A stretch of 63,011 nucleotides of DNA, filler included, from Octopus bimaculoides (lineage: Eukaryota): the NCBI RefSeq assembly GCF_001194135.2. It is 6 parts of 6 records of this genome, joined end to end, with 100 filler letters (N's around TTAATTAATTAA, not from the genome) between each part and the next. Parts side by side here need not be neighbours in the genome. Positions count along the whole stretch, not along the records: positions 28,645 to 46,122 come from NC_069007.1; 5 more parts are not named here. The stretch is one strand, 5' to 3'. Each line of letters begins with the position of its first letter. Within the stretch, counting starts at the first letter, position 1. The notes beneath the pieces are model-generated. The model had not been told where the DNA came from. It did no database searches and was given only the letters and a program-made list of their open reading frames with translations. The translations under genes were made by a program, and so were the position numbers. Shown here piece after piece: positions 35,913 to 38,906 of this stretch.

Positions 35913-36063
35913 CTGTACAAAGTATTAAATGCTTTTTCACAGCCTTTCATGTCACACTCGTATGGCTTTTCCTTTGTGTGTACCCGAACATGCGTCTTTA
36001 AACTGTATGATGTGAGGAAGGTCTTGCCACAACCCTCAAGGTTGCATAAAAACTGGTAATCCC
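35913..36063 (-). CDS. MTF1: MTF1 internal coding exon, C2H2 fingers 2-3 (151 nt, phase 1 to phase 2)
   Basis: Acceptor ccaacag and donor GTGAG. Translates (G)[49 protein letters not shown](R), matching the vertebrate MTF1 stretch [50 protein letters not shown] as I recall it. Confidence 0.95.
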
Positions 36064-36480
36064 CTGTTGGTATCAACCACATCACACAGAAACACGAAAC
36101 AGCACCGGAGAATAAAATGATAAAACAGAAATAAAGTGTGAGGAATATAAATGAAAAAAAAAAAAAGACAAAACAAAAAAAACAAGCAATTGCTATTAAA
36201 GACAAAGATAAAATACTGAATTGGCCAAAAGGTCTAGTTTTGGTCATGACTAAACTTCAAGCACTCTGACAAGTAGCTATTTCACCCACGTACTGGGTAG
36301 ATATCTGGCATTTCAACTTAGTTTGACAAACTTGCAATGAGACTGGTTGTATTGTGGGTGCTTGGAATGACACTGAAAATGGAGAGGCAAAACATTATCG
36401 ACATCACATGCTTCCTTGTTTTAAAGAACGGCAAGAAAATGGTGGAAAGCTGCAGGAAGCTAAATGCTGTGTACAAAGAT

Positions 36481-36920
36481 GTTTTATTTACATTTGATGG
36501 ATATTTGCCCCCATCTTGTTTGTTCTTAACACGTTTTGGCTGATATACCCTCCAGCCTTCATCAGGTGTCTTCAGGAAATTTTGAACCTGGGTTCTCATT
36601 CCTAAGGTATTTTTCGATATTATTATTATTCAGGTCACTGCCTGGAATTGAACTTGGAATCTTGAGGTTAGTAGTCTGTGCTCTTAACCACAAGATTCCA
36701 AGTTCGATTCCAGGCAGTGACCATAATCATAATAATAACAACAACAACATCGAAAAATACCTTAGCAATGAGAACCCAGGTTTGAAATTTCCCCAAGATA
36801 CCTGATGAAGGCTGGAGAGTATATCAGCCGAGACGTTGTGTTAACAACAAACAAGATGAGGACAAATATCCGTCAAAAGTAAATAATGTACATAATTCCT
36901 CATCTCTTAAATATAGAACT
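36481..36920. mobile_element. Head-to-head pair of a tRNA-headed SINE (family D) forming a ~400-nt fold-back
   Basis: The minus copy has an A-box gtggttaag and a B-box gttcaattcc. The plus copy starts at 36691 without the A-box. The bodies are mirror images around a 26-nt loop. Confidence 0.88.
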
Positions 36921-37169
36921 GAAAGATGCTGTTATGGAATGTGTGTGTGCCAGAAGTAGTTTTCAAGATGCACCTGACTATGGCTGGTCAACTGAGATTA
37001 ACAGCGACACCAATCCCAGTCATACAATCAGGGTGATTGCAAATAATCCCCCAAATATCCAAATTCAGTGCTGAGGACATTTGCTTAAACTTTGTTATAT
37101 CAGCAGGCTTGATGTTTGGGGTTCAACGTCGGTTGAATAAGTAACTTTGACCAATAAATCTCCATCAAC

Positions 37170-37620
37170 AATTCATTGCAGAAACATGAAAATGATCCTC
37201 TTTTTTGAAGAGAATGGTGACATGAGATAAAAAAGTGGAACATCTATAACAATGTGAAGTACAAATGGTCAACCTCTGAAGCAGGACTTGATCTGGAGAA
37301 GGCCATGCTTTCGATTTGGTGTGATTGGAAGGGTGTTGTCTCTTATGAGCTTCTTTCTACAGACAGGACCATCAATTCGAATGTGTACAGTGAGACCAAC
37401 CAGCTGGATGAATTAAATGCAGTGATCTACCAGAAGCATCCATCTTGCTAATTTTAATGGAATTGTCTTTCATTACGACAATGCCAGACTGCATACTTCT
37501 TTGCAGATGCATCAATCAGAAGTTGCCAGAGCTTGGTTGAGAAGTTTCCCCTCCCCACCAACCCCACATCTTCAGATTTCCACCCATTTCAGTCCCTTCA
37601 AAATTCACTGATGAGATCAA
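37170..37620 (+). mobile_element. Mariner transposase fragment, degenerate
   Basis: YNNVKYKW..KAMLSIWCDWKGVVSYELL..TINSNVY..QLDELNAVI..IVFHYDNARLHTSL. Confidence 0.8.
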
Positions 37621-37789
37621 TAGAATAAGAACCATCCTAAAAAAAAAAAAATTGTTAATAAAACACAAGTCCTGGGGTTGACTTGTTTGACTAAAATTCT
37701 TCAAGGTGGCGCTCCAGCATGACTGAAGACTAATGAGAACATTACTATCGAAGGCCAGAAAACTGTATAGATGTATAGGGGTTAAAAAA

Positions 37790-38750
37790 GTATGGAAGTA
37801 TAACAGCAGCAGATGAAAAGAGGGTGGAATTCTGGTTTAAGCACCCCACATTTTTTATATTTTGGACTTTTCAGAAAATTTTTGCTAATTTACTCTTTTG
37901 ACTCTTTTACTAGTTTCAGTCATTTGGCTGCGGCCATGCTGGAGCACCGCCTTTAGTCAAGCAAATTGACCCCAGGACTTATTCTTTGTAAACCTAGTAC
38001 TTATTCTATTGGTCTCTTTTGCCAAACTGTTAAGTTACGGGGATGTAAACACACCACCATTGGTTGTCAAGCGATGTTGGGGGGACAAACACAGACACAC
38101 AGACATATACATACATACATACATATATATATACACACACACACACACACATATATATATGACGGGCTTCTTTCAGTTTCCGTCTACCAAATCCACTCAC
38201 AAGGCTTTGGTCAGCCCGAGGTTATAGTAGAAGACACTTACCCAAGGTGCCACGTAGTGGGAATGAACCCGGAACCGTGTGGTTGGTAAGCAAGCTACTT
38301 ACCACATAGCCACTCCTGCATGAGAATTGATTACGGAAAAAAATGTTTTTAAAATTCTTTTTAACCCCACCCTCCCTCCACTAAATCCTAAAACTTCCAC
38401 TCTTTTTTGAATATTTTTAAAAATCAGAGTTTGAAATATGGACAGTCCAAATTTTTTGCTTAAATGCCAGCAATGGATCACCCTTGGGTGCATAATCATT
38501 CCATTCAATGTGCTCATGGGGAGAAAAATATTGAAAAAATTACGTAAGAGTGAGGAAGGTATCAGGTGGTTGTGAGATGTGCAAAAAACAACAGCTAAAT
38601 CACAGATAAGAAAATTTATTATTTTTATAATCGTATAAATTCTTGTGTGTAGAACACAAATTCACAAAAATTTTCTGAAATCACCCCCCCACCATCCAAA
38701 GTTATGAGGGGTTTATATGGGGTGCTTAAATCAGAATTCCGCTGAAAAGT
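37790..38750. mobile_element. Probable MITE with inverted subterminal blocks and a nested SINE
   Basis: ggaattctg(g/a)tttaagcacccca and ttcagaaaatttttg occur near 37830-37885 and in reverse complement near 38660-38740. Confidence 0.45.
37905..38319 (-). mobile_element. SINE family A, full length
   Basis: Tail, internal CA/TA microsatellite and complete tRNA-derived head ending cttaccacatagccactcctgc. Confidence 0.9.
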
Positions 38751-38801
38751 GTTCAATACCAGCAGCACTAGATTGCTACTAATGATGCTCAAAGAAGCAG
38801 A

Positions 38802-38906
38802 AATCTGGAGGACTGTGGCAAAACTTTCCTTATGTGGTACAGTTTAAAGACATATTTGGGTACATATGAAGGAGAAGCCATCCGAGTGTGACATGAAAGG
38901 CTGTGA
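38802..38906 (+). pseudogene. Inverted degenerate copy of most of the MTF1 finger-2/3 exon
   Basis: The plus strand reads NLEDCGKTFLMWYSLKT, then after a 2-nt deletion ..VHMKEKPSECDMKGC. Hand alignment to 36043-35937 (minus) gives 87 of 107 identical columns. No splice sites are retained. Confidence 0.9.

What the first reader, a model, noticed from the sequence alone, without database searches (positions are those of the whole stretch)
35937..38906. Inverted intronic copy of an MTF1 zinc-finger exon: candidate built-in editing guide (ECS)
Seen: 38802-38906 on the plus strand copies exon bases 36043-35937 on the minus strand (87/107 identical, 18 mismatches, one 2-nt gap). The exon needs an upstream exon, and I found none in the gap-free interval between the two, so the copy should be transcribed antisense to the exon in the same pre-mRNA, about 2.76 kb upstream. 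The predicted duplex has 87 Watson-Crick pairs, 4 G-U pairs, 11 A-C mismatches and 3 others. It includes a 24-bp perfect helix over (Y)ECDMKGC(E) and a 14-bp perfect helix over TAC AGT TTA AAG AC, which are finger-2 helix positions +2 to +6. Editing there could give Y>C, S>G, K>R/E or T>A at DNA-contacting positions; the four exonic A-C mismatches are all silent third positions. Two nested fold-backs (36481-36920, 37790-38750) shorten the loop. Established: coleoid cephalopods recode extensively by ADAR, which needs dsRNA often supplied by intronic complementary sequence. Inference: local inverted exon duplication may be a route to creating recoding sites. The mismatch spectrum also fits neutral transition or CpG decay, so function is not shown.
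Basis: partly seen in the sequence, partly recalled or inferred. Interest (0 to 1): 0.85.

Follow-up and report, generated by a model that had tools for sequence, protein, structure and literature searches.

The report
Inverted exon copy in octopus MTF1 intron
An octopus metal-sensing transcription factor gene carries a decayed, backwards copy of part of one coding exon in the intron just upstream; it should fold onto the exon as double-stranded RNA that editing enzymes could act on, but three related cephalopods lack it and nothing shows it is used.

Summary
Window 38802-38906 (+) is an inverted copy of 35937-36043 inside the 151-nt zinc-finger 2-3 exon of Octopus bimaculoides MTF1: 87/107 identical, 18 mismatches, one 2-nt gap, E=1e-24.

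By synteny with O. sinensis, the previous exon lies about 16.7 kb upstream. The copy is therefore intronic and is transcribed antisense to the exon in the same pre-mRNA.

Folding predicts a stable long-range duplex of -130 kcal/mol. 83 of 107 exon bases pair with the copy in the minimum-energy fold of 3.4 kb, and 76 do so with probability above 0.9.

The copy is missing from the whole MTF1 locus of O. sinensis, O. vulgaris and Sepia pharaonis. In O. sinensis the gap is probably a deletion, because it also truncates a shared mariner relic.

Divergence from the exon (17%) is about three times the per-lineage intron divergence, which points to an old duplicate. Its substitutions fit neutral decay: only 4 of 15 transitions keep a G-U pair, and the 24-bp perfect run is not unusual (P=0.09). 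One oddity is that all four exonic A·C mismatches are silent (P=0.001).

Editing could not be tested. Verdict: a genuine but non-conserved exon-derived inverted repeat, a plausible accidental ADAR substrate, and not a demonstrated built-in guide.

The parts
35913..36063 (-). MTF1 coding exon (end of the finger 1-2 linker, finger 2, first half of finger 3), 151 nt. Acceptor AG is at 36065-36064 and donor GT at 35912-35911.
   Evidence: 100% tblastn match to O. bimaculoides A0A0L8G4U8 (P0001). 97.4% nt identity to the O. sinensis and O. vulgaris exons. Splice sites read from the sequence.
35937..36043 (-). Exon arm of the inverted repeat (107 nt, 71% of the exon). It starts 20 nt after the acceptor and ends 24 nt before the donor.
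38802..38906 (+). Inverted partial copy of the exon (105 nt). It is non-coding: a 2-nt deletion shifts the frame and a stop follows. Homology does not extend into intron flanks or neighbouring exons.
   Evidence: Absent from L002, L003 and L004.
36064..38801 (-). Gap-free intronic spacer (2.74 kb) between the arms. It is made largely of transposon relics that fold on themselves.
36485..36885 (.). Fold-back (MITE-like) element with about 190-nt arms, 84-90% complementary. It is shared with O. sinensis.
   Evidence: the repeat finder I1, I4, I6. Helices of 88 and 45 pairs in the MFE. Orthologous sequence in L002.
36950..37640 (+). Mariner-type transposase relic with frameshifts and stops. It is orthologous in O. 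sinensis only up to 37231, where O. sinensis abuts a SINE.
   Evidence: Pfam PF01359 E=1.3e-9. Six-frame translation. Alignment break.
37613..38016 (.). Second nested fold-back in the predicted pre-mRNA structure.
   Evidence: I9, I10, I12. MFE helices.
37893..38320 (.). Multi-copy SINE-like repeat, with about 20 copies in the sampled loci.
38907..39458 (.). (TGATGG)n microsatellite that starts exactly where the copy ends, followed by a 58-bp minisatellite of 7-8 units that contains a 10-N assembly gap.
34431..34562 (-). Next MTF1 exon (fingers 3-4).
31358..31431 (-). MTF1 exon for finger 5.

Best explanation
This is a non-coding, partly decayed inverted duplicate of 107 nt of the MTF1 finger 2-3 exon. 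It lies 2.76 kb upstream in the large preceding intron of Octopus bimaculoides, inside a stretch built from transposon relics and satellite repeats. It most likely arose by local templated copying during repair or replication at a fragile, repeat-rich site (inferred), probably before the O. bimaculoides / O. sinensis split, and was later lost in the O. sinensis/vulgaris lineage by a deletion. Because both arms are in one pre-mRNA, the antisense image of the copy is predicted to pair with most of the exon as a roughly 105-bp imperfect duplex before the intron is removed. ADAR enzymes deaminate that kind of structure, so the exon and the copy are plausible promiscuous editing targets in neural tissue. 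This step is inferred and not shown. Nothing indicates that the element is maintained by selection as an editing guide. It is best read as an accidental, lineage-restricted complementary sequence that is decaying roughly neutrally.
For: The repeat is real and far beyond chance. The window is O. bimaculoides MTF1. No finger 1 or N-terminal exon lies at 36064-46122. In O. sinensis the finger 1 exon is 16.7 kb upstream with no exon between, and the far end of the piece still maps 8 kb downstream of it. The isolated duplex is -129.9 kcal/mol against -34.6±5 for shuffles. In the MFE of 3,401 nt, 83 of 107 exon bases pair with the copy. In the partition function of 3,081 nt, 76 bases have P>0.9. The copy is absent from the full MTF1 loci of O. 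sinensis, O. vulgaris and S. pharaonis. The synteny anchors bracket 2,435 bp in O. bimaculoides against 460 bp (a SINE) in O. sinensis, and the O. sinensis breakpoint cuts a shared mariner relic, which indicates a deletion there. Copy-exon divergence is 17%, against 10% total intron divergence next to the exon. All 18 differing sites are identical in the three Octopus exons. At site 6 the copy keeps the decapod state. Only 4 of 15 transitions preserve a wobble pair. The longest perfect run is not unusual, P=0.09.
Against: No RNA data were available, so neither duplex formation nor editing in vivo is shown. Differences are skewed to third codon positions (P=0.008), and all four exon-A·C mismatches are silent (P=0.0013). 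That could be a trace of selection. At one site (84) the copy shares a state derived in O. bimaculoides, which fits a younger origin or gene conversion. The origin mechanism is inferred only from location and junction context.
Confidence: 0.6

Rival explanations
1. Selected editing guide: the copy is kept in the O. bimaculoides lineage as an editing complementary sequence that directs ADAR to recode DNA-contacting residues of finger 2 (Y>C, S>G, K>R/E, T>A).
For: The predicted duplex is stable and covers helix positions +2 to +6. The perfect helices of 24 and 14 bp are present. All four A·C mismatches that involve an exonic A are at silent sites (P=0.0013), and there is an excess of third-position differences. 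Both fit selection against copy mutations that would drive recoding.
Against: The copy is absent in O. sinensis, O. vulgaris and Sepia, although their exon and protein are conserved. The 24-bp run is not significant. 11 of 15 transitions break pairing. 27 of the 35 exonic adenosines would recode a highly conserved finger, including both zinc-binding histidines. The third-position skew disappears if about 4 differences are old synonymous changes in the exon.
Confidence: 0.1
2. Inert relic: the duplicate has no consequence at the RNA level, because co-transcriptional folding, bound proteins or fast splicing prevent the 2.8-kb long-range pairing.
For: The arms are far apart, and the spacer contains stronger local hairpins (helices of 88 and 45 pairs). 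The element was lost in a sister lineage without visible effect on the exon. The decay pattern is compatible with neutrality.
Against: Equilibrium folding keeps the exon-copy helix at P>0.9 despite the local hairpins, and these shorten the effective loop. The upstream intron cannot be removed before the exon is transcribed. Known distal complementary sequences work over similar distances: prediction pipelines search up to 2.5 kb (PMC5319793).
Confidence: 0.25
3. Other double-stranded-RNA effect: masking 71% of the exon changes splicing (skipping the 151-nt exon shifts the frame), or the hairpin feeds a small-RNA pathway that targets MTF1, as in the inverted-duplication model for new plant microRNA genes.
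For: The duplex ends 20 nt from the acceptor and 24 nt from the donor. The exon length is not a multiple of three.
Against: No transcript or small-RNA evidence. No Rfam family matches the region.
Confidence: 0.05

Closest known systems
Intronic editing complementary sequences (ECS) of ADAR recoding sites, e.g. GluA2 Q/R (intron 11) and the distal intronic ECSs of Drosophila and of Gabra-3 (PMC3479170, PMC5319793, PMC5705066)
   Same: An imperfect inverted repeat of exon sequence sits in a flanking intron of the same pre-mRNA. It is kilobase-scale distant and is predicted to form stems of 20 bp or more over codons.
   Different: Functional ECSs are conserved and evolve slowly (PMC5319793). This one is missing in three relatives. 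No editing is documented. The duplex is much longer (about 105 bp) than typical site-selective substrates, so promiscuous editing would be expected rather than selective editing.
Inverted-repeat transposon pairs (e.g. inverted Alu pairs, cephalopod repeats) as hyper-editing substrates (PMC9989829, PMC9068888)
   Same: Two diverged inverted copies lie within a few kb in one transcript and form long imperfect dsRNA. The element is young or lineage-specific and probably non-adaptive.
   Different: One arm here is a coding exon of a conserved transcription factor rather than a repeat, so any editing would recode protein.
Origin of new hairpin RNA genes by inverted duplication of target-gene sequence (plant microRNA model, Allen et al. 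2004; from my own knowledge)
   Same: A fragment of a gene is duplicated in inverted orientation and creates a fold-back complementary to that gene.
   Different: Here the second arm is the gene's own exon in the same transcript. No small RNAs are known from it.

Membership tests
Editing complementary sequence (ECS) | Base-pairs with the exon around the target adenosines (stems of 20 bp or more) | tested here: met
   Duplex of -129.9 kcal/mol. Helices of 35, 26 and 22 pairs in the MFE of 3.4 kb. 76 exon bases have pairing probability above 0.9. This is prediction only.
Editing complementary sequence (ECS) | Lies in the same pre-mRNA as the exon | tested here: met
   No upstream MTF1 exon at 36064-46122. 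In O. sinensis the finger 1 exon is 16.7 kb upstream, beyond the orthologue of the piece's end. This is inferred by synteny; the O. bimaculoides transcript itself was not seen.
Editing complementary sequence (ECS) | The paired exon adenosines are edited in vivo | not testable with these tools
   No reads or transcripts of O. bimaculoides MTF1 could be obtained. Published site tables could not be searched for this gene.
Editing complementary sequence (ECS) | Sequence conserved across related species with reduced divergence | tested here: not met
   No inverted copy in the MTF1 loci of O. sinensis, O. vulgaris or S. pharaonis. Copy-exon divergence is 17% against about 5% per lineage for flanking intron.
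Editing complementary sequence (ECS) | Removing it abolishes editing | not testable with these tools
   Needs a minigene test or a cross-species RNA comparison.
Inverted-repeat hyper-editing substrate | Two inverted homologous copies within a few kb of one transcript, 80% identity or more over 50 nt or more (criterion used in PMC9989829) | tested here: met
   81% over 107 nt with a 2.76-kb spacer.
Processed pseudogene / retrocopy | Copy spans exon-exon junctions, has a poly(A) tail and target-site duplications | tested here: not met
   Homology stops inside the exon on both sides. There is no match to the spliced neighbours or to intron flanks.
Gene fragment captured inside a DNA transposon | Fragment lies between the element's terminal inverted repeats | tested here: not met
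   The nearest inverted-repeat pair (37826-37891 / 38658-38740) ends 62 nt before the copy.
Template-switch / microhomology-mediated local inverted duplication | Nearby template, inverted orientation, microhomology at the junctions | tested here: inconclusive
   The template is 2.76 kb away and inverted. The 3' junction shares TGA with the adjoining (TGATGG)n array. After 17% decay the junctions cannot be read reliably.

The most novel reading that the evidence does not exclude
The exon-copy duplex is really edited in O. bimaculoides neurons, and the copy records the birth (and, in O. sinensis/vulgaris, the death) of an editing guide made by inverted duplication of the target exon itself. In this reading, selection has already pruned copy mutations that would put a C opposite recoding adenosines, which explains why all four A·C sites are silent. 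That would give a concrete mutational route for creating lineage-specific recoding sites in cephalopods, with a natural knockout in a sister species.
Probability: 0.12. Interest if true: 0.7.

Novelty: new member of a known kind. Interest (0 to 1): 0.4.

Why it matters
How coleoid cephalopods acquired tens of thousands of recoding sites is unresolved, and the RNA structures behind most sites are unknown. An exon-derived intronic inverted copy is the simplest way to create a long exon-containing duplex in one step. This locus also offers a natural presence/absence contrast (O. bimaculoides against O. sinensis/vulgaris) that public RNA-seq could resolve. If the exon is edited only where the copy exists, that would show structural mutations making and unmaking editing sites. 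If it is not edited, it shows that a 105-bp predicted duplex 2.8 kb apart is not sufficient. Most possible edits would damage a conserved DNA-binding finger, so the element is more likely a mild liability than an adaptation.

Tried and rejected
1. Upstream MTF1 exons between exon and copy or elsewhere in the piece: tblastn with finger-1-containing relatives and a full-length cuttlefish MTF1 found none.

2. Assembly artefact: rejected. The arms differ at 17% of sites, and the interval is gap-free.

3. Retrocopy or copy with intron flanks: homology is strictly exon-internal, so the source (DNA or RNA) cannot be told.

4. Copy retained as coding sequence: rejected because of the frameshift and stop.

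5. Known structured RNA in the region: no Rfam hit.

6. Selection on pairing: the wobble-preserving fraction is 4/15 and the run-length test gives P=0.09, so there is no support.

7. Post-split origin in O. bimaculoides, suggested at first by the absence in O. sinensis and by one shared derived base: weakened by the truncated mariner at the O. sinensis breakpoint, by the 17% divergence and by site 6.

8. Editing evidence from the literature: supplements of PMC8382921 and PMC9989829 were searched without a usable hit. PMC5499236 is not held.

9. Exact-ORF look-ups for independent O. bimaculoides contigs failed.

10. Method note: the first protein search returned only proteins of 67-206 residues. 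Padding the query with X reached longer proteins and led to the O. sinensis, O. vulgaris and Sepia loci.

11. Cuttlefish transcript variants in one cluster show no differences in the finger region, which says nothing about editing.
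Full report
**Observation.** The reported repeat exists exactly as described. Window 38802-38906 (+) aligns to the reverse complement of 35937-36043 with 87 identities in 107 columns, 18 mismatches (15 transitions, 3 transversions) and one 2-nt gap. The repeat finder lists it as pairs I5 and I7. blastn gives E=1.4e-24 within the 17.5-kb piece, and no other MTF1 exon here has an inverted copy. The 24-nt and 14-nt perfect runs are present.

**Gene and species.**
- The minus strand encodes zinc fingers of metal regulatory transcription factor 1.
- The window matches the Octopus bimaculoides protein A0A0L8G4U8 (P0001) at 100%. That model is a fragment. It starts inside the intron at 36082 and ends by reading into another intron.
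- The exon limits read from the sequence are 36063-35913 (151 nt, AG at 36065-36064, GT at 35912-35911). The next exons are 34562-34431 and 31431-31358.
- The repeat arm covers 71% of the exon, from 20 nt after the acceptor to 24 nt before the donor.

**Is the copy in the same transcript?**
- tblastn with relatives that contain finger 1, and with a full-length cuttlefish MTF1 (P0188), finds no finger 1 or N-terminal exon anywhere in 36064-46122.
- I reached full-length cephalopod proteins only after padding the query: the first search returned only proteins of 67-206 residues.
- This gave the complete MTF1 loci of O. sinensis (L002), O. vulgaris (L003) and Sepia pharaonis (L004).
- In O. sinensis the finger 1 exon is at L002 30642-30722 and the finger 2-3 exon at 47439-47591. 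They are 16.7 kb apart with no coding exon between.
- The far end of the piece (46122) aligns to L002 39084, still 8 kb downstream of the finger 1 exon.
- The copy therefore lies in the intron that precedes the exon and is transcribed antisense to it in one pre-mRNA. This rests on conserved gene structure. The O. bimaculoides transcript itself was not seen.

**Predicted RNA structure.**
- The two arms alone form a duplex of -129.9 kcal/mol, against -34.6±5.0 for 200 shuffles of the copy arm.
- In the minimum-energy fold of 3,401 nt of pre-mRNA, 83 of 107 exon-arm bases pair with the copy arm, in helices of 35, 26 and 22 pairs.
- In the partition function of a 3,081-nt segment, 83 bases pair with the copy arm at P>0.5 and 76 at P>0.9.
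- The spacer folds on itself through a fold-back at 36485-36885 and another at 37613-38016. This shortens the loop.
- These are equilibrium predictions. Folding kinetics and bound proteins are not modelled.

**Comparison with relatives.**
- Neither the exon nor the copy finds any inverted match in the 67-kb O. sinensis, 64-kb O. vulgaris or 52-kb S. pharaonis MTF1 loci.
- Synteny is clear on both sides. Window 39828-39666 matches L002 45630-45807, and window 37231-35675 matches L002 46267-47871.
- Between these anchors O. bimaculoides has 2,435 bp. This stretch holds the rest of a mariner relic, a fold-back with a nested SINE-like repeat, unique sequence, the copy, a microsatellite and a 58-bp minisatellite. 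O. sinensis has 460 bp there, and it is a SINE.
- The O. sinensis breakpoint falls in the middle of a mariner transposase relic (Pfam PF01359, E=1.3e-9) whose first part is orthologous in both species.
- A transposon inserts as a unit, so O. sinensis must have lost at least about 400 bp there. The absence of the copy in O. sinensis/vulgaris is therefore at least as likely a deletion as a gain in O. bimaculoides.

**Age.**
- Substitution divergence between O. bimaculoides and O. sinensis introns is 6-14% in clean blocks and 10.2% in the block next to the exon. That is about 5% per lineage.
- The copy differs from the exon at 17% of sites. At all 18 sites the O. bimaculoides, O. sinensis and O. 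vulgaris exons agree.
- Three decapod sequences (L001, L004, L005) serve as outgroups. The exon state is ancestral at 7 of the 11 third-position sites. At site 6 the copy keeps the decapod G while the octopus exons have T. At site 84 the copy shares C with the O. bimaculoides exon against T elsewhere.
- The most coherent account is a duplication two to three times older than the species split. It has about 14 neutral changes on the copy and about 4 synonymous changes in the exon before the split, and the copy was later lost in the O. sinensis/vulgaris lineage.
- A younger origin with fast decay, or later gene conversion of the 3' part, is not excluded.

**Tests for selection.**
- Only 4 of 15 transitions keep a G·U pair, and 11 create A·C mismatches. 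This gives no sign of selection for pairing.
- The longest perfect run (24) is reached in 9% of random placements of the differences.
- Differences by codon position are 2/5/11. If all changes fell on the copy, this skew has P=0.008, and the synonymous excess has P=0.009.
- All four exon-A/copy-G sites are silent third positions (P=0.0013).
- If about 4 third-position differences (sites 6, 30, 33, 36) are old synonymous changes in the exon, the copy's own changes are 2/5/7, which is unremarkable.
- I record the skew as unexplained. It may be neutral, or it may be a faint trace of selection against copy mutations that would steer ADAR to recoding adenosines.

**What editing would do.**
- The exon arm has 35 adenosines, and 26 of them sit in A-U pairs with P>0.5.
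- A-to-I would be nonsynonymous at 27 and silent at 8.
- A 105-bp duplex is the kind of substrate that ADARs edit promiscuously (established knowledge), so indiscriminate editing would mostly damage a conserved finger.
- The protein in this region is conserved from octopus to cuttlefish, and O. sinensis/vulgaris keep the exon intact without the copy.

**Origin.**
- Homology is confined to exon-internal sequence. It extends neither into intron flanks nor into spliced neighbours, so a DNA and an RNA source cannot be told apart.
- The copy is not inside the nearest inverted-repeat pair.
- It ends exactly at a (TGATGG)n array that shares TGA with the exon sequence.
- Its closeness to its source argues for a local template-switch or repair event at a repeat-rich, break-prone site rather than a dispersed insertion. 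This step is inferred.

**Comparison with what is known.**
- The element behaves like an intronic editing complementary sequence and like inverted-repeat hyper-editing substrates. Published criteria are 80% identity or more over 50 nt or more within a few kb (PMC9989829), and distal ECSs searched up to 2.5 kb (PMC5319793).
- It meets the structural criteria. It fails the conservation criterion that marks functional ECSs (PMC5319793, PMC5705066). The editing criterion could not be tested.
- In squid, neural recoding sites are mainly in coding sequence, while intronic and UTR sites overlap repeats (PMC9068888).
- Full-text searches found no paper that describes guides born by inverted duplication of the target exon. 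Those searches cover open-access text only.

**Limits.**
- No O. bimaculoides transcript or read data could be reached.
- Published site tables could not be searched for this gene.
- Only three relatives were available, and two of them are sister species.

**Verdict.** This is a real exon-derived inverted repeat in the upstream intron with a robustly predicted exon-intron duplex. It is lineage-restricted and decays in a way compatible with neutrality. It is a plausible accidental ADAR substrate and a good natural test case, but not a demonstrated or conserved editing guide.

Noticed in passing
window 36950-37640 (+); L002 46267-46620: A mariner-type transposase relic lies in the intron. In O. 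sinensis it is cut at the point orthologous to window 37231 and abuts a 460-bp SINE, which marks a lineage-specific deletion.
   Followed up: yes
window 36485-36885: A near-perfect fold-back with arms of about 190 nt lies 420 nt upstream of the exon and is shared with O. sinensis. It is the strongest local dsRNA in the intron and could itself recruit ADAR, like the 'editing inducer' hairpins described in mammals.
   Followed up: partly
window 35376-35800: Inverted and direct copies of an abundant SINE (arms 63-74 nt, 95-97% complementary) lie about 110-540 nt downstream of the exon's donor site, next to an assembly gap (34793-35375). They are a better dsRNA than the exon-copy pair.
   Followed up: no
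window 38907-39458: A (TGATGG)n microsatellite is followed by a 58-bp minisatellite of 7-8 units that encloses a 10-N gap, so the length of the array in the assembly is uncertain.
   Followed up: no
window 30186-36082 (-): The public O. bimaculoides protein model A0A0L8G4U8 is a fragment. Its start codon is in the intron (36082), its last 78 residues are translated intron, and it lacks finger 1 and finger 6. The O. sinensis orthologue is named 'mucin-5AC-like' although it is MTF1.
   Followed up: partly
window 35937-36043 vs 38802-38906: Differences between exon and copy are skewed to third codon positions (2/5/11, P=0.008), and all four exon-A/copy-G sites are silent (P=0.0013). An old duplication would explain part of this, but it is not resolved.
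   Followed up: partly
window 36028-36045; L002 47454-47471: The finger 2 region differs between O. bimaculoides and O. sinensis/vulgaris at two residues (L/V before the first Cys, G/S between the two Cys) despite 97.4% nucleotide identity.
   Followed up: no
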